From NCBI GenBank assembly GCA_002269645.1, contig NIVC01001483.1:62001-126000 (forward strand): a DNA stretch of 64,000 nt, written 5' to 3'. Below are positions 1,826 through 60,121 of this stretch, in pieces (the first letter of the stretch is position 1; each line of letters starts with the position of its first letter). The notes beneath the pieces were generated by a model. The model was given only the letters and a program-made list of their open reading frames with translations, was not told where the DNA came from and searched no databases. The stretch comes from Macrostomum lignano (taxonomy: Eukaryota). The translations under genes and the position numbers were made by a program.

Positions 1826-4800
1826 TCACACCAGGAAATCATGTTCCATAAGCTCCGTTGCCGACTTTCTCTGATTACGGTTTTTGAAGGTACAGAATTT
1901 GTAAAATTCAGAGAGCTCAGCTGAGCAGCTTGTCGGTAGAGCAGGAGCGCCTTCATTTATCTTTTTTCCAATTCCAAACATGCTTTTTATGTCGTCGAAC
2001 GGTCTGATACCAGAGGCCATTTGGAAAACCGAGCAACCAAACGCCCATATGTCTGACCCTTTGCTGTACAGCGCAGAACGATTAATAGGATCGTCGGGAG
2101 CTATGAGTTCTGGCGACATGAAGGCTAACGTGCCCTTGGGCGTCGCAGAATTGTCATTGGCATGGCTGACTAAATTATCAAGTTTGATTGCCAGGCCGAA
2201 TCCAATCAGTTTAACTTTCTTGGTCTCAGAAAGTATTAATATGTTGCTGCAGTTGATATTTCTGTGGATCACTGGCTCATCCAGATTATGAATGTATTTT
2301 AGAGCACTGCAGATCTACGAATAGGAATAGTAGGAGTAACACGAAACTGTTGAATATAAAGTGAAATTAATAGGAAAAAGCAGAAAAACAATAATCTACC
2401 CAAGCACCTACAATTGAAACATCCAACTTACCTGCTTGCTAAACTTTCGAATGTACCTTTCGGCAAGCGGCTTCTTATCAATATAAGTCTCCAAAGTGAC
2501 ACCCTCCAGAAGTTCCATGAAGACAACACATGTCGCATGATCCTTCTCAGCGATGTGCAAGAATTTGACAATGTTATCATGTCGCAATCGGCACAGGTTC
2601 CTATCGCTCGTTATCGCGTTGATACTGCTTGCATTGTTTGGCTGATCGCCCTGCTGCACTTGCAGTTTCAGAGTTTTCGTAGCGCACTTGATTTGTTTGT
2701 CTGTAAGCACTTCGTGAATATCTGCGCAGCCAGCTCCTTCTCCACTAAGAAGACGAATATTTTCCCAGTCGCACAGAATTGGTGGGCTGTTAGAAAATGG
2801 TCAATGGTTTGAATGGTAAGCGGTGATGCTTCTTACTGAAAATTTTACTGGCTACATATCTAGACAGGATTATACTGGTACTATTATAATTGGATTCACT
2901 GTAGTATACTTAAAAACCAGCAATGATCATAAAGCACTCACTCAATCGTTAAAGCTTGCTACGTTTCTTTGCTTCATATACTTGTAACAGACTGTTTTAA
3001 AAGGCTGCTTTCGAACATTTAAATGCAGCTAAATTTCTTAATCTAGCAGAAAATAGGCGCTGAGCATGAGATGATCTCTACGACTCTCGAAGAGATATTT
3101 TCCTTACTGAATTATAACCTTAATATATGATTCATTTATTTATGTTAATATTATGATTTTAGTTTCAGCAGTTCATAAACTCTGCCCGATGCAGAGTTCT
3201 AGCTTCAATTTTTTATTCTCAGTGTACGAGTATACAACAACAGGACGTATTCCCTCCAGTTAAAGTTTCTTTGCCAATTCCTGCTTACCACGCCGGATTA
3301 TTGTGTCAGATTATTAAAGAGAATACGGTACTCGATGCTACAAGTACGAGCGTATTATGGAATTTTAAAACTGTACCTTTCAAAAAGAGCCAAAAACTTG
3401 TGCCCAAGAAGGTCCCCCGCCGACTTCCTGTCCTTTGGCTCTCGAGCGGTGCAGCAGTCATAGAAAGCTCGCAGCTCTGTTGAGCAGCCATTCGGGAGTC
3501 TCGGGGCGCCGTTCTTTTGCAGCTGCTCAGGAATATTGTATCTGTTGCCGCATTCGGAAAAAGGCAGCTCGCCCGAGGCCATCTGGTAGACTGAGCAGCC
3601 GAACGCCCAAATGTCCGACGATTTGCTGTAGTGTGGATTGCTCGAATCATCTTTACCCCCCAGCAGCTCTGGTGCCATGAATGGCATAGTGCCTTTGGGT
3701 TCCGGATTGGAAGCAGAGATGTGGCTTACTGACTGCTCAAGCTTGATTGAGAGGCCAAAATCAACCAGTTTAATTCGCGTTTTGTCAGCGAGAACAACAA
3801 TATTTCTGCAGTTGATGTCTCTGTGGATCAGGGGTGGCTCTTGGCTGTGAATGTACGCCAGAGCGCTGCAGATCTGAGAAATCGTTCAGAGAGTGAGCTG
3901 CGGCATGCCAATGAGTCGTTAACATTATTTACTTACAGTATTATAAAATTATAGGATAACGGTCTGACCTGTGTGCTGAACAGCCCGATGGTCTCTTCAT
4001 CCAGTTTCGATGACTTAGTAATAAATGTATCCAAGGAGCAGCCATCAAGAAGCTCCATGAACAAGACAACTGTCGCTGGCTCTGGCTGACAAATGTACAG
4101 ATATTTGACAATGTTGTCATGCTGCAGTTCGCATAGGTTTTTCTCGGCATTGAGAGATCTGTCAATTTTTTTACGCACTTCGGCTGGCTCATCTGCATTG
4201 AGCTGCATTGGCAGTGCAATAGTTTTTGTAGCACATCTGATGCCAATGTCGGTCAGCACCTCGTGAACGGTACCAGAGGCACCTCGGCCAAGAGTGCGGA
4301 TTTTGTTCCAGTCGTTATCAAACAGGTGGCTGCCCGACCTAAGATTTGGTGAATTTTTATTCGCTTCATGTTCAATTTTCAAAGTTTTTTTTGTTCAGCA
4401 TTTTCAAAACCAGTTTACTGACAGCTCATTCAAGTCGAATGGACCCCATGGGCAGTAAAATGGCTATCTGCTCATTTTTGTGTAGTATGATATTTGAATA
4501 GGATGAAAATATTATCTTTAAAACAAAATTATTGAAACCAAGGGTAAATATTATGTAGTGTTTTGCTGTCACCTGTCACAGTCGTCGCAAAGGAAGTCAC
4601 AAATTCAAATTCACAGTCTATATTATTTTTGCATCGGCTATACCTCATATTCAAACAGTGACTCACCTCGAGCGAGTGCGGCCAGCCGGATTTGTTTCTC
4701 TATGATCCGCCTGACTTACTCGTAGCTCTTGAACTTCCTTCAGCAAAATATTCATCACTTTGGAATGACCTTCGTCGGCAGCGCGTTTCGCTGCTCTCAG

Positions 4801-4947
4801 ACACATCGCGCTTTTATCTACTTCGATCTTTTTGACAAGATACTTTACCACTTCCAAGTTACCATCGGCTGCTGCGGATTCTAAGAAATGCGAGTCAGTG
4901 TTTGTACTTGCAGTAGCACCTGCATTAGCACCATCCGTTTCGCTCAT
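1826..4947 (-). CDS. Spliced gene, copy A: ankyrin-like exon + STE/MAP3K-like Ser/Thr kinase + pseudokinase (~663 aa)
   Basis: Exons 4947-4667, 4338-3969, 3873-3377, 2786-2432 and 2314-1826 have GT-AG ends and join in frame (phases 2,0,2,0). Kinase 1 has GRGASG, CATK, HRD, DFG, APE and SDIWAFG. Kinase 2 has a degenerate Gly loop, HRN and GFG. Further 5' exons are possible. Confidence 0.75.
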
Positions 4948-19570: not shown

Positions 19571-19579
19571 GTCTCTTGT

Positions 19580-28309: not shown

Positions 28310-28410
28310 TGCCAAAGTGAGTGTCTACATTGCCAAAATGAGTATCTTTGGTGCCAAAATGAGTGTCTGTAGCACCAAAATGAGTGTCTGTGGCACCAAA
28401 ATGAGTACTT
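28310..28410. repeat. ~21-nt tandem repeat (CCAAAATGAGTGTCT core), ~5 copies
   Basis: Direct reading. Confidence 0.7.
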
Positions 28411-38840: not shown

Positions 38841-38905
<65 letters not shown>

Positions 38906-43224: not shown

Positions 43225-43499
43225 ATGAGCGAAACAGACGGTGCTAATGCAGGTGCTACTGCAAGTACAAACACTGACTCGAACTTTTTAGAATCCGCAG
43301 CAGCCGATGGTAACTTGGAAGTGGTACAGTATCTTGTCAAACTGATCAAAGTAGATAAAAGCGCGATGTGTCTGAGAGCAGCGAAACGCGCTGGCGACAA
43401 AGGTCATTTCAAAGTGATGAATTTTTTGCTGAAGGAAGTTCAAGAGCTACGTCAGGCGGATTATAGAGAAACAAATCCGGCTGGCCGCACTCGCTCGAG
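43225..43499 (+). CDS. Ankyrin-like exon
   Basis: AAADGNLEVVQYLV / AGDKGHFKVMNFLL; donor AG|GTGAGT; a possible phase-2 acceptor at 43163. Confidence 0.65.
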
Positions 43500-46400
43500 G
43501 TGAGTCACTGTTTGAATATGAGGTGTATAGCCGATGCAATAAATAATGTAGACTGTGAATTTGAATTTGTGACTTCCTTTGCGACGACTGTGACAGGTGA
43601 CAGCAAAACACTACATAATATATTTTCATCCCATTCAAATATCATGCCACCACAAAAATGAGCAGATAGCCATTTCTACTGCCCATGGGGTCCATTCGAC
43701 TTGAATGAGCTGTCAGTAAACTGGTTTTGAAAATGCTGAACAAAAAAAACTTTGAAAATTGAACATGAAGCGAATAAAAATTCACCAAATCTTAGGTCGG
43801 GCAGCCACCTGTTTGATAACGACTGGAACAAAATCCGCACTCTTGGCCGAGGTGCCTCTGGTACCGTTCACGAGGTGCTGACCGACATTGGCATCAGATG
43901 TGCTACAAAAACTATTGCACTGCCAATGCAGCTCAGTGGTGTGGCAGCCGAAGTGCGTAAAAAAATTGACAAATGTCTCGAGGCCGAGAAAAACCTGTGC
44001 GAACTGCAGCATGACAACATTGTCAAATATCTGTACATTTATCAGCCAGAGCGAGAGCCAGCCACAGTTGTCTTGTTCATGGAGCTTCTTGATGGCTGCT
44101 CCTTGGATAAATTTATTGCTAAGTCATCGAAACTGGATGAAGAGACCATCGGGCTGTTCAGCACACAGGTCAGACCGTTATCCTATAATTTTATAATACT
44201 GTAAGCAAATAATGTTAACGACTCATTGGCATGCAGCCGCTCACTTTCTGAACCATTTCTCAGATCTGCAGCGCTCTGGCTTACATTCACAGCCAAGAGC
44301 CAGCCGTGATCCACAGAGACATCAACTGTAGAAATATTGTTGTTCTCGCTGACAAAAAGCGAATCAAACTGGTTGATTTTGGCCTCTCAATCAAGCTTGA
44401 GCTTGATCCGGAACCCAAAGGCACTATGCCATTCATGGCACCAGAGCTGCTGGGGGGTAAAGATGATTCGAGCAATCCACACTACAGCAAATCGTCGGAC
44501 ATTTGGGCGTTCGGCTGCTCAGTCTACCAGATGGCCTCGGGCAAGCTGCCCTTTTCCGACTGCCGAAAACACAAAATCCCCGAGCTGCTGCATGAGAACG
44601 GCGCCCCGAGACTCCCGGATGGCTGCTCAGCAGAGCTGCGAGATTTCTACGACTGCTGCACCGCTCGAGAGCCAAAGGACAGGAAGTCGGCGGGGGACCT
44701 GCTTGGGCACGAGTTTCTGGCTCCTTTTGAAAGGTAAATAAAAAAATCCATAATACGCTCGTACTTGTAGCATCGAGTACCGTATTATTTTTGGAGACAA
44801 ATGGAGATTTTAGAAAAATTCACCATAAAAGACGTAACACAACTGCCCTGAGGCTCTATATTGGTATTTTAGGTTTAATACTTGATACTCCTTGGTGCAC
44901 GAGTTGTTAACTTCCCTTAAATAGAAAATTTTTATATTTTTTATTTTCTTTTTTTTGCTTTATTTCGAGTTAGTTTGCCTCACAGATACTAGAACACTGT
45001 AGAACTTGTTCTAGTATCTGTGGTTTGCCTTAAGCTCGTACAATATAAGTCAGCAATCTCGGCGTGCATTTAACCATAACTTTAATGAATCCCTTTATAG
45101 CCTACCATTCCTGGCGCGTTGGGATTCAGTTCGTCTTATTGGCAGAGGTGGCTTTGGCGAAGTGCACGAAGTACTGACAGACAAGGGAATCAGATGCGCA
45201 ACAAAGACGCTAAGAATTCCAGTACAGCTACTAGATGATCCGCTGGTCTCAGTGCAGGGAATATTACAAAGAGATATTCAAGCCGAAAGAAACCTCTGCC
45301 AACTCCGTCACCCAAACATTGTTAAGTTTTTGCATATGACACAGCCAGAACCAGCAACTTTTGTTGTCTTCATGGAGCTTCTGGACGGCGACACTTTAGT
45401 GAAATTTATCGATGGCAAGCCGCTGGACGAAGGAACAATTCGGGATTTCAGCAAGCAGGCAAGACTTTCACCCATGACATTTTCTTGTTCAACGTAGTAA
45501 TATTATTGCCAACTATTATACTATATCCTATTCTTTTCTTTCCACGCAATCCACCCTTTGTCCTGTTCTGCACCACCCACCTGTGCCATCTAGCCATCCC
45601 TCTCTACAATGCTGCGGCATTTATTGTAGCCGTTTCTATCATTTCTGTTATTGAAAGCTGGCCTAAATTTTTAATCATTCTCTAGTTTTCACCAATTGAT
45701 CAACTGCTATTATTAATGTGGTCCTGGTTTTTCAATTGCATGCAGTCTTTTAACCCTCCAAAATCTTTTTCATTTTTCAGATCTGCAGTGCGCTTTTCTA
45801 TATGCACAGCCGACAACCACCCGTGATCCACAGAGATATCAACAGCTCCAACATTATTGTGCTTAAAGGCAATAAGTCAATCAAACTGATTGATTTCGGT
45901 CTGTCAATCAAACTAGAGCAGTCAGTAACCCACTTGTCTACCATCAGTATTACACCTAAAGGCACCTTAAATTTCCTGGCGCCAGAGCTGATTGGATTAG
46001 GTGAATCAGACAGCGTGCAATACAGCAGAGAGTCCGACATCTGGGCATTCGGCTGCTCTGTTTTTCATATGGCCTCCGGTGAAAGGCCTCATGCGAGATC
46101 GACCAGCATCATTAACCTGGCTATGCTAATTGATAGAATGGGAGCCCCAGCCCTGCCAAGTGGCTGCCCTTCTGAACTAATTGATTTCTACAGATGCTGT
46201 ACCTTTAAGGATCGAAAACAGCGAAGTTCCGCTGAGGAACTGATGGAACACGGTTTTTTAACTAACCATATTCAGTAAGTGATAAATTTTACGAATAATT
46301 GTTATGTTTTCTTTTACACCGAAGAAAGACGGAAGATAGTGTTTGAGCGTTTGCGAGCTTATGCCACTCGAGAGCATAGCCGTTTCAGAATCTTAATATA

Positions 46401-49400
46401 TTTCTTTGGCTCGCGAGCCGTCTCAAGCATTTAATACTGTACCGAGTATCTAGAGTTTCAACCCTAGACACTTTAGAAGCAGAAAGCAAACGAGGCCGAA
46501 GTCTATAAGAAGTCAGAAGTCACGTCACAACATCCCTCTTCCTTTCAATCTTGAGCCTGATACCTCTCCGGCGGTCTTCGCGTTCGCTGAGGGTATCTGC
46601 GATCCGCCATCGGTTGATCCTCAGCACTTGGAGGTTCTCTCACTGGCTCATTCGTTGCCTCGGCTCTGTCCCTGACATGGTCACGGTGCACGACCAGATC
46701 TCGTCCTTGCTCGTCCCGCACTCGTCTCAACTGTTCGCCGACAGCTTCGCGCAGCACTTCCACTCCTTGTTAAACGGATCCTGGACCCAGACTGGGCTGT
46801 AGGCTTGGTCAATCCGCTTGTCTTGAAAGGACCGACGGTGCAGCAGTGAGAGTCTCGTGTTGAACTCGCGCCCAAACATTTCTCGGCACGGCGCGACTCC
46901 GTTGGCTCTTGGACAGACTCGCACCGCGTACAAAGCCTGTTGCATCCGAACCTCCGGATCTGAATCATTCAGCTGCTTCAGCTTGGTCTTCAGCTTTTTC
47001 ACTGCAGCCTCTGCTACGCCATTTGATGCGGGGTGGTAGCGGGGAGACTTCAGGTGTAACACTCCCATCCGCTTCAGCCAGGCCTCCGTCTCATGCGCCA
47101 CAAACTGTCGTCCGTTGTCAGTGACTAGTACATCTGGGATGCCAAAGTTGCAAAATGTTCTGCGGAATACTCTGATGACCGACGTTGCATCGATTTCGCG
47201 CACCCATTCGGCAGCGATGAATCCCGTCTTGGCGTCTGAAACCACCAGAAAGTTGCTTCCATCCAGTTGTCCCAGGTCAGCGTGCACTCGGCACCAAGCC
47301 TCCTTTGGTACTGGCCATGGTTTGAGCACCGATTTCTGGGATGGTCTCATGCGCTGGCACGTGTGGCATTCCGAAACGCACTTTTCTATCTCTGTCTCCA
47401 TTAGCGGCCACCAGACATACTGGCGGGCCCACGCCTTCATGGCTTGCATTCCGGGATGGGAACAGTGGAGAAATTGGATGACTTGCGCTCGGAACTTCAC
47501 CGGGATGACGATCCGATGGTCCAGTAGCAGTAGATGGTCGCTGCAATTCAGTCTGCACTGTACTCTTCTGTATGAGTCCGGCACGTCCTCACCAGATCGC
47601 AACCTCTGTAGAACGTCTTGGATCTCCTTGTCCTCCTTGGACGCCTGCTCCATCTGATCCTTCGTGACTGGTCCATCTTCTGACAGGGCGATGTCCACCG
47701 CAGCAACTTCGTTAACCGCTTCAGTCGCCGTTTTGTCGCTCCAGTTATTTCCGTCAGTTGGTAGTCTCGACAACGCGTCGGCATGAGGAATTTCGTGCGT
47801 TCTTTTGCCTCTGACTAGGTACTGGTACGTAGCCAGCAACTCAGCCCAGCGCTGAACTCTCTTACTTGCTCTCTCGGGCAGGTCTTTGTGTGATGCGAAT
47901 AAGAATTCTAGAGGCTTGTGATCGGTCACAATCACAAAACTCCGATAAGCTAGGAATCGATTTAGCTTCTTGACGCACCAGACCACTCCGAGGGCTTCTC
48001 GTTCTAGCTGGCTGTATCGCGACTCCGCAGGTGTGAGTTTCTTGGACACAAACGCTACAGGCCTTCCATTCTGCTCCAGCACTCCTCCAATGCCGTAGGG
48101 CGATGCATCTGTAGTCAGAGTTAGCTCCTTACTTGGATCGTACGGCGCTAGCACCTGCCTTGATGTAATGTCCTGCTTCAATTGCATCACGGCCTTCGTG
48201 TGTTCTTGTTGCCATGTCCAGCTGACATCTTTCTTCAGCAAGTTATACAGAATGGCAGTCTTCGTGGCCACTTGCGGGATGAACGGCGCATAGAAATTTA
48301 TCAGTCCCAGAAATGTTCTCAGCTCTTCCTGGTTTCTTGGATCTTCCATGCTTTGTATTGCCGTCACCTTATCCTCGTTCATGCAGCATCCCTCCTTTGA
48401 GATCTTAAGGGCTAGAAACTCGACCTCTTCCTTGTCGAACTGGCACTTCTTAGCATTCAGTGTGATGTCATTCTCTTGCAGCCTTTTAAGTATTATTTCC
48501 GTCTTCTCGGCTAAATTTTCCCGGTTTTTTCCACAGACTAGAATGTCGTCAATAAACACCACCACTCCGAGGACATCCCGAAGCAACTCGCATAGTGTGT
48601 TCTGAAACAATCCAGGAGCAGATGACAGTCCGTATGGTAATACCCTGTACCGAAAGTAACCAAAAGGTGTTGCGATAGTAGTGATATCCCGTGAGTCCTC
48701 GCACAGCTCCAGGTTATGGTATGCATCCTTCAAATCTAGCACAGTGAAACGGCTGCATCCTGAGATGGCTCGTTGCACGTCCGCCTTTGTTGGCATATCG
48801 ATTGGCGGTAGCCGTAAAAACTGGTTGACCCGTCTATAGTCTCCACACAGCCTGATGTCTCCCGAGCTTTTGGGAACGACCACAATCGGACTAGCGAACA
48901 CCGGCTGTTCTACTTTTTCAATTATCTTCCGCTTTTCCAGATCTTCTAATCTTTCCTTAACGGCTGGTACCAGCGAAAATGGGAGTGGTCGGGCCTTCGA
49001 TACCACCGGTCTCGTGTTTTCTCGTACTTCCAACTTTACTTGAATTCGCTTATAAGCCACTGAAGCTTGACAACGGCGTTTGGTAATTTCGATACCCAAA
49101 CTACTAAACCAATTTCGGCCAATAACCGGCTTTGCGTTCATGTCCATGACTACCACAGGTAATGAGCACTTACTTTCATCTTCGGTCTGAACTCGAACAT
49201 CTGCGGTACCACATACTGGTAGGTCTTGTCTTCCGTATGATGTTAGTCGACAATTTGGGTCTGTCCAATGCAGTCCTAGTTGTTCAGCCAAAATCTTAAA
49301 AATGCAGGTCACTGATGCACCAGAGTCCACCATCATAGCAACATCCTTATCGTTCAGTTTTACATTGATCCAGACGCTTGATCTGTCCCGGTCATCGCAT

Positions 49401-52400
49401 AGGCTAAAAAGCTCATTGTCCTTGGCTGGTTCATCCTCCTCCTCGATTCCTGCACACTCTCGCATTGACAACTTTCCTTTAATGGAGCCAGATGCCATCC
49501 TTCCATGTGAGCTAGCTTGCTTGTTAAGCTTACATGCAGCTTCAAAATGGTTCATTTTCCCACATTTTCGAAATTTTGCTCCAAACGCAGGGCATGCCTT
49601 TGGCGGGTGCCTCTTCATACAGAAATTGCAAGCCTTGCTGAATGTGCGTCCTTGAGCTTGGGCCCTGTTTTGTTGTCGTACTTTGCCCTTAGTCGCACTG
49701 ACTGTTTCCACCTTTCCATTAGCGCTTAAGGCACTCTTGCTTACTTGCTCTTGCGCCGTGGCAGTCTCCACCGCCAGCTCCAGGGTCAGCGGGTCTTTGA
49801 TAAGCAGCTCTTTCACCACTGACTCACTGCGCAGTCCTGCCACGAATCTGTCTCGCAAAGCTTCTTGTAGGAAATCTCCGAATTGACATCGGTCTGCTTG
49901 AGCACGTAACCTGTTCTCAAAATCTGCCGCTGATTCGTATTCATCTTGCTTCAGTAAGTTAAACTTGTAGCGCTCAGCTACAACCAGTTTCTTCTGCGGC
50001 ACGACATGCTTCTCAATTTCATCCTTCAATTCCTTGAAGGTCTTGTTCTCTGGCTTCGCCGGAGCGACCAGGTTCCGCAGCTTGTCGTAGGCAGTTTCCC
50101 CCATGAGGCTTATGAAGAAGTCGGTCTTGGGCGAAAACCCTTCCTCCTTCTCATCCTTCACGCCGGATCTCCTGCAGACGGCTTCAAACCGCTCGATCCA
50201 GACCTCGAATTTGTCCTCTGTCCAGGGAAGCTCCCGCAGGTTCTCTCGAGACAGCGACGCCGTTGTTATGTTTTCTTTTACACCGAAGAAAGACGGAAGA
50301 TAGTGTTTGAGCGTTTGCGAGCTTATGCCACTCGAGAGCATAGCCGTTTCAGAATCTTAATATATTTCTTTGGCTCGCGAGCCGTCTCAAGCATTTAATA
50401 CTGTACCGAGTATCTAGAGTTTCAACCCTAGACACTTTAGAAGCAGAAAGCAAACGAGGCCGAAGTCTATAAGAAGTCAGAAGTCACGTCACAACACGTC
50501 ACGTTATTTACATTCATTGATTGTATGCCGGCATTGGTTTATTTGCTTGTTAAAACTGCTTTAAATATGATGGCTTATGGCTCAATATTTTTAGAGTAGG
50601 TGACGAATTAGAATTCACACAGGCCACTTGTGCTGTCAATTAATGAAAAACTAAATAATTTGTTGGAGCTCTAGTACCATTGAATGTAGCGGAAACAAAA
50701 AAGATATACGAAAACAAAAACTTGGAGTGGAGGTTATGTATTTGTGCAATGAACAAGCCAATAAGGGGGTAGGAAGGCAAGTACATTCGTAAGCCGTAAG
50801 CCTCTGCTACTTTCTGGTCTATTTACAAAGCTAGTTGGTATTTGGATGCTGAGCGTCATAAGCCTGGCGTTTGAGCGTCAATCAAATACCTGCAGCAGTT
50901 TTCAAAGATATATGTTGCAAAGTGCCATTCAGCCTACTTGATTTTTTACGATGAGAGTAGCTAGGGTAGAATCACGCTAGGGCGTGATTTAACACACTGT
51001 TTATATTCTGTGGGCTGAGAACGACGTTAAAAGGAAATTGAAAAAAACATCCTTTTAGCTGTTTTTGTTTTTCCTCCGCGGAATTTCCTCTGTGAAATCT
51101 TCCCTGTGGAATTCTCAGTAAAATCCCTTAGTTTTAAATCCCATTCAGCATAGTCCAAATGTACTTTGCAATGAAATGCAATGCAATGAAAGCAACAAAA
51201 TTCCACGTAATTGAGCCCTCTTCTCTCAGCACTATTCCCTTCAGGATCATTCCCCATCAGCGTAATTGCCCCTTCGCATCATTCCCCACTCAGCATCATT
51301 TCCTCTTAGCAGCATCCCCTATTAGCACAATTCAGTGGCCATTCACATAATTCCCACAGAGTATTCCAAGTCCAGCTCACTTTAATATCAGTGATTCATG
51401 CAAGATAATTTAATAATTAACGAAAGCTTTTTGTTTAACTTATGTAGGAATCGTATTCTGGTGGCTGCCGAAAATGGTGAATTCGATGTGGTAAGGAATT
51501 TGGTGCAGACAGTCACTAATCAAACAGAAAGAGATGAGTGCTGCATCAAGGCTGCCAAATGTGCTGCAAGCAATGGTCAGTTGAAAGTCGTCAAGTTCTT
51601 CATCTCGTGTCTCTCAAGTCCGGATCGGAGAGTGAATCTCCGTTTCCAATGCGCAGTCGCGGCTTGCTCTCGTCTTCACGAAGATGTCGTTGTCTTCCTC
51701 GGCCTCGAGCCCGACTGGCTCTTCCAATCCAGCACCATCCTCAGCTTCACTGCAGCAATGGCCATCGAAGGCAGCAACTCCGTTCTCACCGACACCCTCT
51801 CTCGAATGCAGCCAGCTCGCATCACACAGCTGCTCCGTCTCTCCATCTCACAAAGACACGTCGCTCTTGCTGTCACACTGATCAATGATGAGCGAGTCAG
51901 CACAGAGCATGTCGATCGGCCAGACAGCACAGGAGCCACTGCTCTCATGCTGGCAGCTGATGCAGGTCATCACGAACTCATTGAGAAACTCATCGATCTC
52001 GGTGCGTCAGTGCGTGCTGAAGACAGTCAGGGTCGGACTGCTCTGTCACGAGCGTGCGAAGCCGGTCACGTGCGAGCAGTCAGGGCTCTGATGGACAGAG
52101 GAGCGGATGCGAGTCATCGAGACGGTCGGGGTCTGTCGTGTGTGCAGGTGGCACAGCTATTCAAGCAGCGGCAGGTGCTGAGGCTGCTGGATCGCAGTGG
52201 AGCGAGGTGAGTGAGGCAATAATTTTTCATCCACTTTAGAATGAATGCGTGAAGTTCAAAACACTTCAGCCGTTAATTTTTATGTAAAAACTTAGATAAA
52301 GCGTCTCCGATACACCAAATGATTTTTTTATTCACGCATTGCAGAAGCCCAGAGGCCCGGCAGGCATCCACTCATCGCTTGGATTGGGGCCTCCATCGGT

Positions 52401-55400
52401 GAGTCTGACCGGTTCAGCTTTTGCTGCCGCATTGCGCCTTCCAACAGGCTGCATGGCAGCTTGGGGCAGAAATTGCGGCGAAACTCAGCAAGGTTGAGAT
52501 TGGGTTGGACTGAGCGCTGCAGCAGCTGCACTCTCAACTCTCCTGCTTTTTCTGTCCGAGCAAATCACCCACACGCATCTCGGATCATTCCAGGTTCTCA
52601 GACGACTCTCAGCAAGACAGGTTCCTGAGCGAGGAGCTGCATCGACTGCTCAGCAATGCGGGATTCACCGAGCAGAGAGCAAGGTGTCAGCAGAGACTGG
52701 CTGACTGGCTGCAAGGAGTCGCTGGAGTTCTCACACAGGATGGCAATCGCAGGCAGATGACGGGCAGCTACGCAGAGGGCTGGGCCAACAATCTGGTGCA
52801 AGTGAACGGCAGGACAGCTGCAGACTCGGATATTGACTGGACTGTGCTGGTTGCTGGGCAGCAGTTCCATCTGGCAGGTGGCTGCGACAGACATTGGGAA
52901 CCATGCAGAGACGCCATTCTGCTGCAGGTTAAGGAAGGCCATGCACAGGTGGCAGTGGGAGCAGGTGAGTGAGGCTGGGTTCATCATCAGAATGACATAT
53001 TCTGTGGAATGCGCTGAAATCCATCGATTTCCTACTTTTTTTGCATTCCTATCATCAAGCTAGTACTAGTAGTGCAAGCCAAAAGCTTGATACTGAGAAA
53101 TAGTCTGCGAATTTTTTCGCTCTATTGTTTTTTTCATCTTCAAGCGAAACAATAAAAACCCACATCTTTATAGACAGTGTTTTTATTATTTATTTTAATT
53201 TGTTTTCCTATTTAAATACTTTTTCTGTTTTTAGTTCGTGTTAGGTACTAGACACTCAAATATTCGCTGAGAAGCCGGTAATTTTATATCCAGTGCTTTT
53301 AACTGGCCCTTAAGCGACTCAGAAATAATATTTATCCTATATAATCAGGAGAATATCAGCAGTTTGAAACCCATTCATCTGCTCTGCAGGCAGCCAACCT
53401 GCAGTGACAGCCACGGCGTGCGGTGTGCGGCCTGCACAGGACACGTGCCATGCGATCGAGTGCTGCAGCAGTTTCTGTGAGGACAGAGTTAGAAAACTGC
53501 TTGGACACAGCTTCAATAAAGTTCACCTCATTCGGGCGACCAGACCGAGCTCGACCAACGAGCTCAGAGTGAGCTTCAGCTTCCAAGAGAAACACATCAT
53601 GAGAGACCTGAGCACAGTCCAGGGCCAGCTGTTCACACTCATCAAGTTCATCTTCAAGAGACACTTGCCGCTCACTCTGGACACACCTGGACTCAAGACC
53701 TACCATGCAAAGACTCTGCTCTTCACAATGCTGGAGAAGCATGGCGCAGATCCTAAAACTAAGGCTTGGCAGCCCCACAATCTGATCGCTCTGCTCAAGG
53801 AGTCTCTCGACATGATGCTGAGCTTCATCGACTCAAGCAGCTCGCCCGATGAGTGCATGCCGCACTTCTTCATTCCCGACGCTCCGCTCTACTTCAAGAA
53901 CGCTGGAATCGGCGGCGACTTCGACAACACGAAGGCGAGGGTTCGAGACCGACTTTGTGAGCTGAGAAGCGACATCGGCGGAGTGGTTGAGCAGCTGAGG
54001 AGACTCGTGAGACCTCTGCAGTCAGTGAAATTCTACTTTCACCCGTTCACTCTGCTGCCTCTGACAGCGCCGCCTGCTGTCACGGAGATCAGGAAACAAA
54101 GTGAATATCCAGAATTTTATTACAATTTCGCAGACGTGTACAGTGTGGTGCATCAGTGTGTGAGCGAGCTGCAGTCGGAATCGAGCGACAGAGACACCCT
54201 GATGAGGCAGCTCAGTCTCCTGCATAAGCTGCAATGGTGCAAGTGCGCCGCCCTGTGCATGACCGCCATGGCGCATTTGAAGTTCGGAGAATCTGAGAAG
54301 GCTGAGAGACTCGCGATGGAGCTGCAGAGACATCAGGTTGAGTCAGGGTTGAAGCCACAGGATATCCGAGACGAGAGTAATAAGATAAAACTGTCAGCAG
54401 ACTCAGACTGGGCGTGGAGGTTCTGCCTCCCCTGCGACTCTCCGCCTCGCTTCCCATTCCTTCCCGAGTTCACGCAGACTCTGTTCACAGCCAGACTGTC
54501 GCAGCTTCTCTCCTCCCACCTGTACGTGAACTTCCGCTGCCTGAGCTGGAGTCTCCAAGCTGAGCTGCTCCGCAATCGCGCACCTGCAATCGCATTCGAT
54601 CATTGGATTGAACAGCTGCTTGGAGACCCGGACTTGGAGGAGCTGCTCGCTCTGGCTCACTACAGCGACTGCCGCAAGCACGTGGAGCTCAGCCTGCAGC
54701 AGATGGAGATGATCGAGAAAGAGAGACGCGTAGCCATGGAGACGCAGGACGAGGAGAAGATCGGCTGGCTGAGGCAGAAGCTGGAGAGACTTAATGATGC
54801 AGAAGTTAGAGTAGCCAAAACACAAGCTGACGTCAATCTTCGACGAAACTCTGGCGAGTCACCTCTCTACATTGCATCTGAGCAGGAGATCCTGGAAGCC
54901 GTTATGTTCGAAAATGAAGCAAAAATTTCACGATACCTGCAGACGCCTTCTAACGTTGATAGGCTCCTCAGCATCAATGAGATTACTTTCTCACCGCTTC
55001 ACTTTGCGTGTGAAATGGGAAAAGAAAAAATTGTCGAAATGTTCGCTCTAGCACAAGCTGACGTCAATCTTCAAACAATCGATGGCTGCTCACCTCTCAA
55101 CATTGCATCAAGGATGGGTCACCACCAAGTTGTGAGCTCACTCATCAAAGCACAAGCTGACGTCAATCTTCAACGAAACGATGGCTCCTCACCTCTCTTC
55201 ATTGCATCATGGAAGGGTCACCACCAAGTTGTGAGCTTACTCATCAAAGCACAAGCTGACGTCAATCTTCAACGAAACACTGGCGAGTCACCTCTCCACA
55301 TTGCATCACATTTTGGTCACCACCAAGTTGTGAGCTCACTCATTAAAGCACAAGCTGACGTCAATCTTCAACGAAACACTGGCGAGTCACCTCTCTACAT

Positions 55401-58400
55401 TGCATCACATTTTGGTCACCACCAAGTTGTGAGCTCACTCATTAAAGCACAAGCTGACGTCAATCTTCAACGATACGATGGCTGCTCACCTCTCTACATT
55501 GCATCACAGAGGGGTCATCACCAAGTTGTGAGCTCACTAATCAAAGAACAAGCTGACGTCAATCGTCAACGAAACACTGGCGAGTCACCTCTCTACATTG
55601 CATCACATTTTGGTCACCACCAAGTTGTGAGCTCACTCATTAAAGCACAAGCTGACGTCAATCTTCAACGAAACACTGGCGAGTCACCTCTCTACATTGC
55701 ATCACATTTTGGTCACCACCAATTTGTGAGCTCACTCATTAAAGCACAAGCTGACGTCAATCTTCAACGAAACACTGGCGAGTCACCTCTCTACATTGCA
55801 TCACATTTTGGTCACCACCAAGTTGTGAGCTCACTCATTAAAGCACAAGCTGACGTCAATCTTCAACGATACGATGGCTGCTCACCTCTCTACATTGCAT
55901 CACAGAGGGGTCATCACCAAGTTGTGAGCTCACTAATCAAAGAACAAGCTGACGTCAATCGTCAACGAAACACTGGCGAGTCACCTCTCTACATTGCATC
56001 ACATTTTGGTCACCACCAAGTTGTGAGCTCACTCATTAAAGCACAAGCTGACGTCAATCTTCAACGAAACACTGGCGAGTCACCTCTCTACATTGCATCA
56101 CATTTTGGTCACCACCAAGTTGTGAGCTCACTCATTAAAGCACAAGCTGACGTCAATCTTCAACGATACGATGGCTGCTCACCTCTCTACATTGCATCAC
56201 AGAGGGGTCACCACCAAGTTGTGAGCTCACTCATCAAAGCAAAAGCTGACGTCAATCTTCAACAAGTCGATGGCTGCTCACCTCTCTACATTGCATCACA
56301 TTCTGGTCACCACCAAGTTGTGAGCTCACTCATTAAAGCACTAGCTGACGCGAATGGTGTACATATTGATAGTCAAGAAGTGGCTAAAAGTAAATTCGCT
56401 GTGAAAGAGCCAACGAAACAGTTAGATTTTGGGTAAGATTCATTTTTTAATTTTTTTTGTTCTAAATAACTTTTTCGAATAGTTTTTTACGGGTCCGATG
56501 AAGATAAGGTAATTGTGCAAGCAAGCGGTCGTGAGAGGCAGTGTTGGCAAACAGCATGCAAACAGCGGAAAGCGAGAGCTTGCTGAATTCTGAGTCAAGA
56601 TGGATTTAACATGGCTGATATCACAGGCTAGTATATCTGCTCACAGGGTTTATCCGTGACTCAGAAGTAAATGCAATGTGAATGTGGAGTTCAGGACCCC
56701 ATCTGCCGCCATCCCCATAATTGGCATCGTCAGCAAATCAGGTTTCTTTTTGATTTACTCGGACCGCTCAGACCCGTTCGACCAATAAAGTTGCCTCGTA
56801 AGCCTGCCACTCTACAGACGCTTTACCGGGCAGTCACGAAAATTGGACCATTTTCAGGAACAAACCATGCACATATTTTCTCTGGACACTGGGCTCACCC
56901 TATGGACTCACCACCGGCCTGACCCACCCCACCTCCCGCCTCCTCCACTCCACACACAGGTCTCTGAATCTAAAGTATCAAATCCTCATCGCTGAATCAA
57001 CTCTTTTCCCACCTGCCAACCATATCACAGACACTCTGCATGGACACTCTGTATGGGCAGTCATGGAAATTGCACACATTTTCTCTAAACTAAACTAAAC
57101 TAAACTAAACTAAAGAACTAATTAAAGGATCAACTGCCTGCAAAATGATCAGCAAAATCAATTCATGCACTGTACGGGAGAGCTTCCCTGTGCTACACAA
57201 ATTAGTCAATTAACCCGTGTAGACCTGCAAGTTTTTCACAAACAATTCACATTTTAGATGCAGTCCCAGCGACTCAGAGCTGAGCCATCAGCTGCACTCA
57301 GCACTGGAGCAGTCAGGCTTCACCGAATCCCGAGCCGCATTGCAGAGCGCGGCTGCCGATGTTTTGCAGCAGATTCTAAGAAGTCGACTGAACTACGATA
57401 ACTTTTTTGTCATTGGCAGCTACTCAGAAGGCTGGGGAAACAGCCTGACGACACTGGATGGCAGAACTGACTCCAATTCCGACATTGATGTGATGTGTTT
57501 GATTCCCGGTCGAGAATACCACCAGAGAGGCCTGTGCGAGTGCGATGGCGCTCCGGAGCAGCACGAGTTGGTGAACGGGCACATTCAGATTTCAGGATTC
57601 GGTGAGCTCTCTCTTGGGGAGTGAGATGGTGTTAGTTCTGTTAGTGATTTCTATAGATTCTGGTAGTGCAGGCATTCCCGTTTTGTGTCCCACCTGTGTA
57701 AATTATTACTGGGAAACTCATGGCATTGTGCGTAGCTACGAGCTCGCATAAAATCGCTAAAAAATATCTACGACCCAAACAAGAACCTGACTGTTTTCTT
57801 TCAGTCTGGATTGATTTTGTACACATGCATGTGCATTTGAAATTTATTTAACCTGCGGGGCTATACCCACAGAATGAAAGTCTGTATTGGCTAGCTATAC
57901 CCACAGAATGAAAGTCTGTATTGGCTAGCTATACCCACAGAATGAAAGTCTGTATTGGCTAGCTATACCCACAGAATGAAAGTCTGTATTGGCTAGCTAT
58001 ACCCACAGAATGAAAGTCTGTATTGGCTAGCTATACCCACAGAATGAAAGTCTGTATTGGCTAGCTATACCCACAGAATGAAAGTCTGTATTGGCTAGCT
58101 ATACCCACAGAATGAAAGTCTGTATTGGCTAGCTATACCCACAGAATGAAAGTCTGTATTGGCTAGCTATACCCACAGAATGAAAGTCTGTATTGGCTAG
58201 CTATACCCACAGAATGAAAGTCTGTATTGGCTAGCTATACCCACAGAATGAAAGTCTGTATTGGCTAGCTATACCCACAGAATGAAAGTCTGTATTGGCT
58301 AGCTATACCCACAGAATGAAAGTCTGTATTGGCTAGCTATACCCACAGAATGAAAGTCTGTATTGGCTAGCTATACCCACAGAATGAAAGTCTGTATTGG

Positions 58401-60121
58401 CTAGCTATACCCACAGAATGAAAGTCTGTATTGGCTAGCTATACCCACAGAATGAAAGTCTGTATTGGCTAGCTATACCCACAGAATGAAAGTCTGTATT
58501 GGCAACTTGCATTTATTATATGTATCTCATTGAGTAGTTCATATATGCTCGTAGTATAGGTATAACAATATTCGAATTTTCTTCTCTCACAATCATCAGT
58601 CCAAAGCATCAACTGCACAGACTCTAAGCTGCATATTGCCCAATCGGGAACCGAATCGTTTTTACAGCCTCCAACCCTGCTGCTGCGAGACCCGGATGCA
58701 CACTGAGGCCAGCGATGGACAATGTCTCCGCATGCCGTCTCTGCCGCTACCCGCCCATCGCGCCGCTGCTACCATACCGCGTCTCGAACATCCCTCATTC
58801 GGTGCTGGAGGCTCTCCGGAAGGTTCTCACCTCCGCCTCATCGCCCTGCCACGTGGTGCACGCAGCCTCTCCTGACCGAGGGGGCAAAGAGCTCCGCGTG
58901 AGCACCAGCTTCCTGGAGAACCGGATGCTGCGAAGTCTCTCTACCCTGCAAGGTCAACTGTTCGTCACACTCAAATACCTGGTCAAGAAGGTCATCTGTC
59001 ACAAGAATGGCTTCAATCAGCAAGGCTTGAAGTCCTACCACGTGAAAACCATCACCTTCCGAATGGTGAACGAGACGCCGGTCGAGCAGTGGAAGACGGA
59101 GAACCTCGTGAGTCTCACGAGACAGTCGCTGCAGATGCTGCTCGACTGTGTGGAGAAGAGCCGAGAGCAGGACAGACAAACACCTGACACACCTGACCGA
59201 TCTCGGGGTCGCATCATGAACCATTTCTTTCTCAGCGATGCGGCCATCTACCTCAAGGGTGCGGACAAGGAGAGAGCGGACCAGCATTTGGACGGCATCA
59301 TGAGCACACTGAGAACAGTAATCGATCGGCTGCCCCAACTGCTGCAGCAGTTCATCGGCAGTCTCAGACCTGTGAGCGACTCAGGCACATTCTACTTCCA
59401 CCCGTTCCAAATCCTGCCGGATCTGAGGCCGATGCCCCTCACGAAGTCCAGTACTCTCGAGTACTATCAGATCTACGACGTGGTGAGAGAGTGTCTGGTG
59501 CGTCTCTCTTGCAGTGACTGCAGCCAGCGATCTCAGGAGTCGCTCACAGAGCTGATTGCCAGACTGCCAGACTGCGCCCTCTCAGCACGGGAGGCTCTCA
59601 GAGCGCTGGCTTGCCTGAAGTTCGGCTACCGAGGAACTGCAGAGAGAGTCGTGAGCTTGTACTCAGGTCACTCGGTGAGCAGAGGCATCGCTTGGTCTCG
59701 TGAGAAGTCGGCGACTGAAGCGACTATGGAGTTCGTGATGCGGCATCTGAGCAGCCGCAACTCAGCGTGGAAGTTCTGCTTTGAGTTTGACCAGCGACCG
59801 AAACTCGAGTTCTTGACAAGAGCTCTGAGGGAGTGCTTTCCCCTCCGGTTGTCAAGCATATATGACCATTTATACATGAACTTTGATGCTCTGCTGTGGG
59901 CTCTGCGGCTCGAGCTGCGGACTGATGGAGAAGCGCGCACTCAGGACTGGATCCGGGATGTGGCTGAGAGAGAGGACTCGGATGAGCAGGAGCTGCTGGT
60001 TGCCGCTTTTTATTCTTCGAATCCAGAGCAGCTTCAGGAAATGATGAATAAGCTGAAGATGATGGGAGCATATTCTCTTGATTGGCTGAAGGCGGGAATT
60101 CAGGAAAAATGGTGCTTTTAA
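43225..60121 (+). CDS. Predicted 10-exon gene, copy B: ANK-like / kinase / kinase / ANK / cGLR / ANK array / cGLR (~2,646 aa)
   Basis: Exons 43225-43499, 43796-44168, 44264-44733, 45101-45458, 45781-46274, 51448-52206, 52594-52964, 53390-56432, 57258-57601 and 58668-60121 sum to 7,941 nt and join in frame. The 46274-51448 junction is the least certain. Confidence 0.6.
43796..44733 (+). CDS. Kinase domain 1 of copy B (two exons)
   Basis: GRGASG, CATK, AEKNL, HRD, DFG, APE; phase-0 intron 44169-44263. Confidence 0.9.
44981..45022. mobile_element. 42-bp hairpin micro-MITE with 8-bp TSD
   Basis: 16-bp arms CACAGATACTAGAACA / TGTTCTAGTATCTGTG; GTTTGCCT on both flanks. Confidence 0.75.
45101..46274 (+). 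CDS. Kinase domain 2 of copy B (two exons, GC-AG intron)
   Basis: GRGGFG, CATK, AERNL, HRD, DFG, APE; intron 45459-45780 begins CAG|GCAAG. Confidence 0.88.
46300..46532 (-). repeat. 3' LTR
   Basis: Direct repeat of 50264-50496. Confidence 0.93.
46533..46546 (-). promoter_or_regulatory. Polypurine tract
   Basis: Minus strand GAAAGGAAGAGGGA abuts the 3' LTR. Confidence 0.8.
46545..50341 (-). CDS. Gag-Pol polyprotein, with a frameshift near 46765 before the C-terminal tail
   Basis: Zn knuckle CNFCMKRHPPKAC, protease VDSGA, RT LDLKDAY/FIDD, RNase H TDAS, integrase HHCC + DL/TDNG/AE. The tail ...RYPQRTRRPPERY is in another frame. Confidence 0.9.
50264..50496 (-). repeat. 5' LTR
   Basis: Direct repeat of 46300-46532; followed by a PBS-like ACGGCGTCGC. 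Confidence 0.93.
51448..52206 (+). CDS. Ankyrin-repeat exon
   Basis: AAENGEFDVV, GATALMLAADAGH and GRTALSRACEAGH; acceptor TGTAG|G, donor AG|GTGAGT. Confidence 0.85.
52594..54790 (+). CDS. cGAS-like/Mab-21 nucleotidyltransferase domain 1 (two exons)
   Basis: GSYAEG...DSDID, ELRVSFSFQE and KTYHAKTLLF motifs; phase-1 intron 52965-53389. Confidence 0.8.
54820..56360 (+). repeat. Coding ankyrin array: 13 near-identical 99-nt units plus 1-2 degenerate units
   Basis: 33-aa unit RNTGESPLYIASHFGHHQVVSSLIKAQADVNLQ and variants. Confidence 0.95.
57258..60121 (+). CDS. cGAS-like/Mab-21 nucleotidyltransferase domain 2 (two exons)
   Basis: GSYSEG...NSDID, MDNVSA, ELRVSTSFLE and KSYHVKT motifs; phase-1 intron 57602-58667 at the same position as in domain 1. 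Confidence 0.8.
57860..58503. repeat. 34-nt tandem repeat, ~19 apparently identical copies, intronic
   Basis: Unit GCTATACCCACAGAATGAAAGTCTGTATTGGCTA; no spacers. Confidence 0.95.

What the first reader, a model, noticed from the sequence alone, without database searches (positions are those of the whole stretch)
43225..60121. Putative giant immune protein fusing two kinases, ankyrins and two cGAS-like receptors
Seen: ten exons with consensus splice sites join into one 7,941-nt frame. The order is ANK-like, kinase, kinase, ANK, Mab-21/cGLR, ~14 ANK, Mab-21/cGLR. The ORF track shows these as unrelated pieces because each module ends in a splice donor whose sequence reads as a stop. Established: animal cGLRs make nucleotide second messengers for STING, and RNase L uses ankyrins plus a pseudokinase to sense the OAS product. 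Inference: this may be a self-contained sensor-synthase-kinase device that signals without a separate receptor. I do not know this architecture from the literature, but could not search.
Basis: partly seen in the sequence, partly recalled or inferred. Interest (0 to 1): 0.92.

Follow-up and report, generated by a model that had tools for sequence, protein, structure and literature searches.

The report
Neighbouring flatworm kinase and double-cGLR genes
The supposed giant immune protein is most likely two neighbouring genes of the flatworm Macrostomum lignano, a two-kinase gene and an ankyrin/cGAS-like gene that is itself a local fusion of two family members, with a young retrotransposon between them; both gene types are already known.

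Summary
The window is Macrostomum lignano DNA (Mlig_3_7 contig NIVC01001483.1). One donor is GC, not GT.

The kinase-to-cGLR link (46274>51448) has no support.
- Three di-kinase relatives, two of them transcript-derived, stop right after kinase 2.
- About ten cGLR1-type relatives begin with their own Met.
- Of about 120 family proteins with domain lists or Pfam scans, none combines Pkinase with Mab-21.
- Three paralogous kinase loci have no cGLR downstream.

The in-frame join is possible because every inter-module intron in this family is phase 2.

The second half is better supported. Reading 51398-60121 gives a 2,006-codon frame: ANK, Mab21, 14 ANK, Mab21. The first Mab21 unit runs into the ankyrin array within one exon. 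This is a locus-specific, in-frame fusion of two different ANK-cGLR genes, with the breakpoint near 54800. No expression data were available.

Ankyrin-cGLR and tandem-cGLR architectures, and M. lignano cGLRs themselves, were catalogued by Li et al. 2023. Verdict: a new member of a known kind, of modest interest.

The parts
43225..43499 (+). Gene A exon 1: start codon and an ANK-like helical N-terminal repeat
   Evidence: model. Ank_2 E = 0.002, below the cut-off. P0037 has the same N-terminus, MSETDGANAGATAST. DNA homology to the paralogue locus L001 starts about 470 nt upstream, at 42757.
43796..44168 (+). Gene A exon 2: kinase 1 N-lobe (GRGASGTV, CATK)
   Evidence: Pkinase E = 3e-9..
44264..44733 (+). 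Gene A exon 3: kinase 1 C-lobe (HRDINCRN, DFG, APE). It ends in the phase-2 donor GAAAG|GTAAAT.
   Evidence: Pkinase E = 7e-27; nearest solved kinases are ASK1/MAP3K5 and MEK1..
45101..45458 (+). Gene A exon 4: kinase 2 N-lobe. It ends in the GC donor CAG|GCAAGA.
45781..46278 (+). Gene A exon 5: kinase 2 C-lobe (HRDINSSN, DFG), ending ...MEHGFLTNHIQ with stop TAA at 46276-46278. The GTAAGT at 46275 is the positional and phase equivalent of the donor at the end of kinase 1.
   Evidence: Pkinase E = 9e-28; relatives stop at the same point..
46300..50496 (-). Ty3/gypsy LTR retrotransposon in the intergenic space. LTRs at 46300-46532 and 50264-50496; gag-pol ORF at 46727-50341.
   Evidence: 234-nt direct repeat, 100% identical. 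TG..CA ends, no target-site duplication seen. Retrotrans_gag, protease, RVT_1, RNase H and integrase domains.
51398..52206 (+). Gene B exon 1: probable start ATG 51398 (in-frame TGA at 51392), one and a half copies of the 'CCIKAA' helical repeat, then about three ankyrin repeats
   Evidence: Ank_2 E = 2e-20; residues 14-69 align to gene A residues 16-69, at the same distance from the Met; relatives start the same way. Caveat: 51397-51446 is 22% G+C and looks intron-like.
52594..52964 (+). Gene B exon 2: Mab21 unit 1, first NTase exon (GSYAEGW, DSDID)
   Evidence: G, S and D-x-D are invariant in the family; 79% identical to the same exon in paralogue loci.
53390..54800 (+). Gene B exon 3, first part: rest of Mab21 unit 1 (third Asp in RPAQD, Mab-21_C helical lobe, about 270-aa helical extension). 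DNA homology to cGLR1-type paralogues ends at about 54800.
   Evidence: PF20266; 85-86% identical to P0086-P0090; breakpoint; paralogues stop 6-60 aa after EEKIGWV(R/M)QK.
54801..56432 (+). Gene B exon 3, second part, same open frame: a partial ankyrin repeat, an N-cap resembling the N-terminus of cGLR2-type genes (EQEILEAVMFENEAK...), then 14 ankyrin repeats. It ends in the phase-2 donor TTTGG|GTAAGA.
   Evidence: 14 Ank stretches; 99-nt repeat, 13.1 copies, at 55050-56350. N-termini of P0008 and P0015; single 1,022-codon open segment.
57258..57601 (+). Gene B exon 4: Mab21 unit 2, first NTase exon (GSYSEGW, NSDID). It has no in-frame Met, so it needs the upstream exon.
   Evidence: P0002 is homologous across the junction.
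58668..60121 (+). Gene B exon 5: rest of Mab21 unit 2 (RPAMD, Mab-21_C, helical extension), stop TAA at 60119-60121
   Evidence: PF20266. AF2 model pLDDT 79.8. Foldseek hits MAB21L1 and MB21D2; profile hits cGAS.
1829..4947 (-). A second, independent di-kinase gene of the same family (= BOX15_Mlig009993g1). It ends ...MEHDFLV then TGA and has no cGLR downstream.

Best explanation
The region holds two same-strand genes of an expanded Macrostomum lignano family. In this family an N-terminal ankyrin-type module is combined, by phase-2 exon shuffling, with different effector modules.

Gene A (43225-46278, five exons, 657 aa) encodes an ANK-like cap plus two tandem STE-like Ser/Thr kinase domains. 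It stops at TAA 46276.

A very young Ty3/gypsy element (46300-50496, antisense) sits 21 nt after that stop, in the space between the genes.

Gene B (probably ATG 51398 to TAA 60121, five exons, 2,006 codons) is a locus-specific in-frame fusion of two different ANK-cGLR genes. The first is a cGLR1-type gene whose normal stop is missing. Its frame runs on, from about 54800, into the ankyrin block and Mab21 domain of a cGLR2-type gene. The two Mab21 parts are 34% identical.

Inferred function. Each Mab21 unit keeps the G-S, D-x-D and third-Asp residues of an active cGAS-type nucleotidyltransferase. If expressed, gene B would be a cytosolic sensor. Its ankyrin blocks would bind or gate a ligand, and one or both Mab21 units would make a nucleotide second messenger, much as OAS2 and OAS3 chain several synthetase-type units.

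Shown: the sequence anatomy and the family comparison. Inferred: expression, catalysis, ligand and downstream receptor.
For: Origin. L003 is 100% identical to window 1-21108, which places the window on GCA_002269645.1 contig NIVC01001483.1.

Gene A ends at 46276.
- P0037 (transcript-derived BOX15 model, 662 aa, 72% identity, 99% coverage) has the same first 15 residues and ends ...ELMEHAFLV.
- P0039, encoded at 4947-1829 in this window, ends ...EHDFLV then TGA.
- P0038 (ANK+K+K) ends 12 aa after the kinase.
- The GTAAGT at 46275 has the same position and phase as the kinase-1 donor at 44733, as expected for a relic of the duplication of the kinase exon pair.

Gene B has its own start.
- P0092, P0095, P0096 and P0088 begin with a Met followed by the same CCIKAA-type repeat. 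In L005 the ATG is contiguous with that exon.
- The repeat lies 14 residues after ATG 51398, against 16 residues after the gene A Met.

No kinase-cGLR combination.
- 0 of 50 kinase hits carry Mab-21, and 0 of about 65 Mab21 hits carry Pkinase.
- 0 of the 10 largest representatives scanned carry both.
- L001, L003, L004 and L005 show no linkage within 10 kb.

Fusion within gene B.
- The open segment 53368-56433 is a single 1,022 codons.
- Paralogues stop 6-60 aa after EEKIGWV(R/M)QK.
- DNA homology to them ends at about 54800.
- The same join appears in P0009, a model from the independent earlier assembly.

cGLR identity.
- AF2 model: pLDDT 79.8, pTM 0.78.
- The only Foldseek hits below E = 0.1 are MAB21L1 (9e-5) and MB21D2 (7e-4).
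- The family profile hits cGAS at 1e-6 and a cGLR1 structure at 3e-3.
- G53, S54, D75, D77 and D132 are invariant, and D132 lies in a predicted strand.
- Li et al. 2023 list close paralogues among the cGLRs they screened: PAA68676.1 = BOX15_Mlig016402g1 = P0092, and PAA93208.1.
Against: - No transcript data could be consulted, so the gene boundaries rest on comparison with relatives.
- The donor at 46274 and the acceptor at 51448 look as good as the accepted sites. The 50 nt before 51448 are 22% G+C with a T-rich tract, like the 3' end of an intron. Exon 51448-52206 may therefore have an upstream partner that I did not identify.
- No transcript-derived BOX15 protein matching gene A or gene B at 90% identity or more was returned. 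The locus may be weakly expressed or silent.
- dN/dS against paralogues is high: 0.48-0.88.
- The retrotransposon shows no target-site duplication, so a rearrangement at this spot cannot be excluded.
- The NTase core is too diverged for Pfam PF03281. The best structural matches are MAB21L1 and MB21D2, which are not known to be active enzymes. Foldseek TM-scores are only 0.42-0.48.
Confidence: 0.7

Rival explanations
1. One 2,646-aa protein is made by splicing the gene A donor at 46274 across the retrotransposon to 51448, physically coupling two kinases to two cGLRs.
For: The frame is open over all ten exons. The donor TTCA|GTAAGT and the acceptor TTTGTTTAACTTATGTAG|G are as good as the other sites, and the sequence just upstream of 51448 is AT-rich and intron-like. 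The genes lie on the same strand and would be only 976 nt apart without the transposon. M. lignano does transcribe neighbouring genes together in operons (PMC8629364).
Against: - Three di-kinase relatives stop at this point.
- cGLR1-type relatives have their own Met.
- An in-frame ATG preceded by a stop lies 50 nt upstream of 51448, at the right distance from the repeat.
- No protein in the family, or among 1,180 profile hits sampled for the largest members, combines the two domains.
- Three kinase paralogue loci have no cGLR neighbour.
- Uniform phase 2 makes such joins automatic, and a chance mini-exon does the same.
- Gene predictors chain neighbouring family members routinely (P0009, P0007, P0122, P0163, P0120).
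Confidence: 0.06
2. Three expression units. Gene A is one. A cGLR1-type unit is the second. The ANK14-cGLR2 unit is expressed on its own from inside exon 53390-56432. It would start either at the internal ATG (MFENEAK...) or by spliced-leader trans-splicing, since the M. lignano leader ends in ATG.
For: The sequence after the breakpoint keeps the N-cap of an independent cGLR2-type gene. A phase-0 acceptor, CATCTGAGCAG|GAGATC at 54886, would put the leader's ATG directly in front of EILEAV.... The leader CGGTCTCTTACTGCGAAGACTCAATTTATTGCATG and 30% trans-spliced genes are documented (PMC8629364). In P0122 a second unit keeps its own Met in frame.
Against: A separate cGLR1 mRNA would have no stop codon before the ankyrin array. 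The acceptor at 54886 is only a pattern match inside coding sequence. No data were available.
Confidence: 0.14
3. The locus is a recent, poorly expressed or decaying duplicate cluster. The open frames survive only because the copies are young, and neither gene has a working product.
For: No transcript-derived BOX15 model matching the locus was returned, although the window comes from that annotated assembly. dN/dS is 0.88 for cGLR2 against its closest paralogue. The fusion removed the cGLR1 stop and the cGLR2 start. A transposon landed 21 nt after the gene A stop. Kinase-gene fragments lie nearby, at 21523-21295 and 11165-10900.
Against: There are 2,006 and 657 codons without a stop or frameshift. 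About 78 substitutions separate cGLR2 exon 5 from its paralogue with no nonsense change, where I estimate roughly 3-4 would be expected under neutrality. The catalytic residues and all splice sites are intact.
Confidence: 0.15

Closest known systems
Animal cGAS-like receptors with appended ankyrin repeats, and tandem (multi-)cGLR proteins (Li et al. 2023, PMC9980059)
   Same: Mab21-type NTase fold with the G-S / D-x-D / D residues. Ankyrin repeats fused to the NTase. Two NTase units in one reading frame, an arrangement the paper likens to OAS2 and OAS3. Close M. lignano paralogues (77-84% identical to unit 1) were among the 140 cGLRs screened in that study.
   Different: Here both features occur together (ANK-cGLR-ANK14-cGLR). 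The two units belong to different subfamilies (34% identity). The arrangement is specific to this locus rather than the family norm. Each unit carries an extra helical extension of about 270 aa. No flatworm enzyme was among the 15 active cGLRs reported.
Human MAB21L1 (5EOM) and MB21D2 (7LT1)
   Same: Best structural matches of the predicted unit-2 model: Foldseek E = 9e-5 and 7e-4, probability 1.00.
   Different: Only 11-13% identity and target-normalised TM-scores of 0.42-0.48. Li et al. state that Mab21L1/2/3 lack a predicted functional active site, whereas this family keeps all three acidic residues and G-S.
Ankyrin-plus-kinase and tandem-kinase proteins (RNase L, ILK, RIPK4; plant tandem kinase immune proteins). 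These comparisons are from my own knowledge.
   Same: Gene A combines an ankyrin-type N-terminal module with two kinase domains in tandem. In paralogues (P0037, P0039) the second kinase has HRN and GFG in place of HRD and DFG, which is pseudokinase-like.
   Different: No KEN/RNase domain and no 2-5A-type ankyrin sensor block. The kinases are STE-like, closest to ASK1 and MEK1. In gene A both domains keep HRD and DFG. There is no link to the cGLR gene.
Ty3/gypsy LTR retrotransposons
   Same: Two identical 233-nt TG..CA LTRs flanking gag, protease, RT, RNase H and integrase.
   Different: No target-site duplication is visible. The element is very compact, at 4.2 kb.

Membership tests
cGAS-like receptor (cGLR) / Mab21 NTase | Bilobal Mab21/cGAS fold (NTase core plus helical Mab-21_C lobe) | tested here: met
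   AF2 model of unit 2: pLDDT 79.8, pTM 0.78. The only Foldseek hits below E = 0.1 are MAB21L1 and MB21D2. PF20266 matches just above the cut-off in both units. The family profile hits cGAS at 1e-6 and a cGLR1 structure at 3e-3 over the helical lobe. TM-scores are modest (0.42-0.48).
cGAS-like receptor (cGLR) / Mab21 NTase | Complete active site: G-[GS] loop, [DE]-x-[DE] on strand 2, and a third acidic residue on the neighbouring strand | tested here: met
   G53, S54, D75, D77 and D132 (unit 2 numbering) are invariant in 9 sequences of both subfamilies. Unit 1 has GSYAEGW, DSDID and RPAQD. D132 lies in predicted strand 130-139. I judged the equivalence to cGAS E225/D227/D319 by eye, not by superposition.
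cGAS-like receptor (cGLR) / Mab21 NTase | Match to the Pfam NTase core family PF03281 (Mab-21) | tested here: not met
   No match at E <= 1 for either unit, nor for P0008 or P0015. The core is too diverged for the Pfam model.
cGAS-like receptor (cGLR) / Mab21 NTase | Ligand-activated synthesis of a nucleotide second messenger | not testable with these tools
   Needs a recombinant enzyme assay. Five M. lignano relatives were screened by Li et al., but none appears among the 15 active enzymes they describe.
Tandem (multi-)cGLR fusion, OAS2/OAS3-like | Two NTase units encoded in one continuous reading frame | tested here: met
   Unit 1 and the ankyrin array share one 1,022-codon open segment. Junction 56432>57258 is homologous to the ANK-to-Mab21 junction of the family. 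The total is 2,006 codons with no stop.
Tandem (multi-)cGLR fusion, OAS2/OAS3-like | A single mRNA or protein carrying both units | not testable with these tools
   No transcript data. P0009 is only an automated model.
   0 of about 115 family hits and 0 of 10 large representatives combine them. Relatives of gene A stop at the position of 46276. Relatives of gene B start with their own Met.
RNase L-type ankyrin-pseudokinase sensor | Ankyrin 2-5A sensor, pseudokinase and KEN ribonuclease domain | tested here: not met
   No RNase or KEN match. The kinases are STE-like with HRD and DFG present. The N-terminal block is a sub-threshold ANK-like repeat.
Ty3/gypsy LTR retrotransposon | Paired LTRs flanking gag, protease, RT, RNase H and integrase in that order | tested here: met
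   No target-site duplication was found.

The most novel reading that the evidence does not exclude
The relic phase-2 donor at the end of gene A (46274) is used, at least in some transcripts, to splice over the retrotransposon into 51448. This would yield a 2,646-aa protein that couples two STE-like kinases to two cGAS-like nucleotidyltransferases and about 17 ankyrin repeats. I found no example of that architecture among the family proteins or papers I searched.
Probability: 0.06. Interest if true: 0.8.

Novelty: new member of a known kind. Interest (0 to 1): 0.3.

Why it matters
As proposed, a kinase-cGLR super-protein would have been a new signalling design, but the evidence does not support it. 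Three smaller points remain.

1. Li et al. report that most platyhelminths lack cGLRs, yet M. lignano carries a large, fast-evolving set of ankyrin-cGLR genes. This locus shows how new multi-unit receptors arise by in-frame fusion of neighbours.

2. In this family the ankyrin, kinase and Mab21 modules all end and begin in intron phase 2, and caspase-bearing relatives exist. This is a clear substrate for exon shuffling. It also explains why automated annotation, and a human reader, chain neighbouring genes into giant proteins.

3. The hetero-tandem cGLR is a reasonable candidate for testing whether one unit regulates the other, as in OAS2 and OAS3.

Tried and rejected
- Profile search of alignment A1 against PDB sequences. 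It was swamped by designed ankyrin proteins because some ankyrin columns were modelled. I repeated it with the trimmed core alignment A2.
Look-up of ORF 58715-60121 found no record. No transcript-level evidence could therefore be obtained.
It is a chimeric automated model of another locus (transposon piece, many N-terminal repeats, one cGLR unit, then low-complexity sequence) and has no kinase.
- Spliced-leader ATG as the start of gene B at 51448: rejected, because it is out of frame and stops after 11 codons.
- Literature searches for kinase-cGLR fusions and for a described Macrostomum ankyrin-effector family found nothing relevant.
- Other long ORFs in the window (11.9-20.2 kb, 28.3, 38.5 and 61.7 kb) have no Pfam match.
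- A target-site duplication for the retrotransposon was looked for and not found.
Full report
**What is there**

All close protein relatives are from Macrostomum lignano. A locus fetched through one of them is 100% identical to window 1-21108. This places the window on contig NIVC01001483.1 of assembly GCA_002269645.1, at about 62,001-126,000 in the same orientation.

The exons are 43225-43499, 43796-44168, 44264-44733, 45101-45458, 45781-46274, 51448-52206, 52594-52964, 53390-56432, 57258-57601 and 58668-60121. They sum to exactly 7,941 nt and translate to 2,646 codons without a stop.

Pfam confirms two protein kinase domains, each split into an N-lobe and a C-lobe exon. It also confirms ankyrin repeats in 51398-52210, 14 ankyrin repeats in the large exon, and a Mab-21_C match just above threshold in each of the two last large ORFs. 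The first block is only ankyrin-like.

Two things differ from the description.
- The donor after 45458 is a GC donor, CAG|GCAAGA.
- The long 'intron' 46275-51447 contains an intact antisense Ty3/gypsy element. It has two 100% identical LTRs (46300-46532 and 50264-50496) and a 1,204-aa gag-protease-RT-RNase H-integrase ORF.

**The kinase half is a gene of its own**

The transcript-derived model P0037 (BOX15_Mlig024413g1, 662 aa) covers 99% of the 657-aa product of 43225-46278 at 72% identity. It starts with the same MSETDGANAGATAST and ends ...ELMEHAFLV. The window reads ...ELMEHGFLTNHIQ and then TAA.

A second copy of this gene lies in the window itself, on the other strand (4947-1829). It is identical to P0039 (BOX15_Mlig009993g1) and ends ...MEHDFLV then TGA. 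P0038 (ANK + kinase + kinase, 985 aa) also stops a few residues after the second kinase.

None of the 50 kinase hits carries a Mab-21 domain. The three paralogous di-kinase loci I could read have no ankyrin-cGLR gene within 10 kb downstream.

The good-looking donor that overlaps the stop (ATTCA|GTAAGT, phase 2) lies at the same position and phase as the donor ending kinase 1 (GAAAG|GTAAAT). It is most simply a relic of the duplication of the kinase exon pair.

The kinases are closest to ASK1/MAP3K5, MEK1 and WNK3, so they are STE-like.

**The cGLR half starts on its own**

About ten transcript-derived relatives of Mab21 unit 1 are 76-86% identical and 770-998 aa long. All have one N-terminal ankyrin block and one Mab21 unit.
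- The complete ones begin with a Met and the same 33-residue 'CCIKAA' helical repeat that follows ATG 51398.
- In locus L005 the ATG is contiguous with that exon.
- The repeat starts 14 residues after ATG 51398 and 16 residues after the Met of gene A. The two N-termini align at E = 7e-8 in a pairwise comparison.
- ATG 51398 is preceded by an in-frame TGA.
- None of about 65 Mab21 hits carries a kinase.
- A profile search of 1.84 billion representatives found 1,180 relatives. The ten largest that I scanned combine the unit with ankyrins, a caspase, RING or EGF domains, but never a kinase.

The 50 nt before 51448 are 22% G+C with a T-rich tract and look like the end of an intron. So 51448 may be a real acceptor whose partner I did not find. 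A chance mini-exon (ATG 50736 to 50788|GTAAGC) fits it in frame as well as gene A does.

**Why everything joins in frame**

All five boundaries between modules are phase-2 introns: after 43499, 44733, 46274, 52206 and 56432. The introns inside the kinase domains are phase 0, and those inside the Mab21 domains are phase 1. This is the signature of a family built by exon shuffling. The same ankyrin-type front end appears in relatives with one kinase, two kinases, kinase plus caspase, or Mab21.

It also means that any neighbouring pair of family genes on one strand can be chained into one frame. Automated models do exactly that: P0009, P0007, P0122, P0163 and P0120.

**Gene B is itself a fusion**

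Relatives of unit 1 stop 6-60 residues after EEKIGWV(R/M)QK. In the window the frame continues...EEKIGWLRQKLERLNDAEVRVAKTQADVNLRRNSGESPLYIASEQEILEAVMFENEAK... It then runs through 14 ankyrin repeats, all in one 1,022-codon open segment.

DNA homology to two paralogue loci ends at about 54800. Those loci have nothing of unit 2 downstream.

What follows the breakpoint resembles the N-terminal cap of the other subfamily, for example P0008 and P0015. Its ankyrin array is a 99-nt repeat of 13.1 copies at 90% identity.

The junction 56432>57258 into Mab21 unit 2 is the standard ANK-to-Mab21 junction. Paralogue P0002 is homologous on both sides of it, and the exon at 57258 has no Met of its own.

The two Mab21 units are 34% identical.

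The same join is present in P0009, an automated model from the earlier independent assembly, so it is not an assembly artefact of this contig.

ATG 51398 to TAA 60121 thus reads as 2,006 codons: ANK, cGLR, ANK14, cGLR.

**Are these cGLRs?**

- Pfam's NTase core model does not match.
- An AlphaFold model of unit 2 (pLDDT 79.8, pTM 0.78) finds only MAB21L1 and MB21D2 in the PDB at significant scores.
- A profile of the core finds cGAS (1e-6) and a solved cGLR1 (3e-3).
- G-S, D-x-D and a third Asp in a predicted strand are invariant in both subfamilies.
- Li et al. 2023 included five M. lignano proteins of this family in their screen of 140 cGLRs. One is P0092, which is 84% identical to unit 1.
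- The same paper lists ankyrin-cGLR and tandem-cGLR proteins as known minority architectures.
- It notes that most platyhelminths lack cGLRs.
- The 15 active enzymes it describes come from other phyla.

Each unit here is about 600 aa because of an extra C-terminal helical region of about 270 aa.

**State of the locus**

No transcript-derived protein matching either gene at 90% identity or more was returned, although the window comes from the annotated assembly.

dN/dS against the closest paralogues is 0.48-0.58 for kinase 1, about 0.6 for unit 1 and 0.88 for unit 2. This points to relaxed or diversifying selection. All frames, splice sites and catalytic residues are nevertheless intact.

M. 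lignano trans-splices 30% of its genes to a leader that ends in ATG, and it has operons (PMC8629364). A phase-0 AG at 54886 could in principle give unit 2 its own start, but this is only a pattern match.

**Verdict**

- The most likely reading is two genes separated by a young retrotransposon insertion (about 70%).
- The second gene is a locus-specific hetero-tandem ankyrin-cGLR.
- This is a new member of architectures that are already catalogued, and its expression and activity remain to be shown.

Noticed in passing
window 1829-4947 (-): A second complete di-kinase gene of the same family (= BOX15_Mlig009993g1 / P0039). Its second kinase reads HRN...GFG instead of HRD...DFG, so it looks like a kinase-pseudokinase pair.
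   Followed up: partly
window 21295-21523 (-) and 10900-11165 (-): Short fragments 76-100% identical at protein level to the kinase 1 N-lobe of gene A. They are probably pseudogene remnants of further family copies.
   Followed up: no
window 46300-50496 (-): A compact (4.2 kb) Ty3/gypsy element with 100% identical LTRs and an uninterrupted gag-pol ORF, so probably a very recent insertion. No target-site duplication is visible at its ends.
   Followed up: partly
window 57860-58503: A perfect tandem repeat, 34-nt unit x 18.9 copies at 100% identity, inside the intron between the two exons of Mab21 unit 2.
   Followed up: no
window 51237-51332: An imperfect 33-nt (and 16-nt) C-rich tandem repeat about 70-160 nt upstream of the presumed start of gene B.
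   Followed up: no
relatives P0055, P0059, P0062; P0163: Family members combine ankyrin repeats and a kinase with a caspase (Peptidase_C14) domain. One 2,111-aa model reads ANK-Mab21-ANK-caspase. This suggests a shuffled ankyrin-plus-effector repertoire in M. lignano, but some of these may be chained gene models.
   Followed up: no
P0030, P0107: Two relatives come from metagenome records, one labelled as a Kangiellaceae bacterium MAG on a 1,065-bp contig. They are 40-54% identical to the flatworm Mab21 units and are probably eukaryotic (flatworm-like) DNA in environmental assemblies.
   Followed up: no
window 11940-20202 (-), 28263-28718 (-), 38540-39388 (-), 61721-62185 (+): Several ORFs of 150-345 aa have no Pfam match. 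The run on the minus strand between 11.9 and 20.2 kb may be one unannotated gene or repeat.
   Followed up: partly
window 26001-28000 and 38001-42000: Strong local composition shifts: G+C 0.30 with GC skew +0.25, and GC skew +0.37 at 38-40 kb. These suggest low-complexity or repeat tracts.
   Followed up: no
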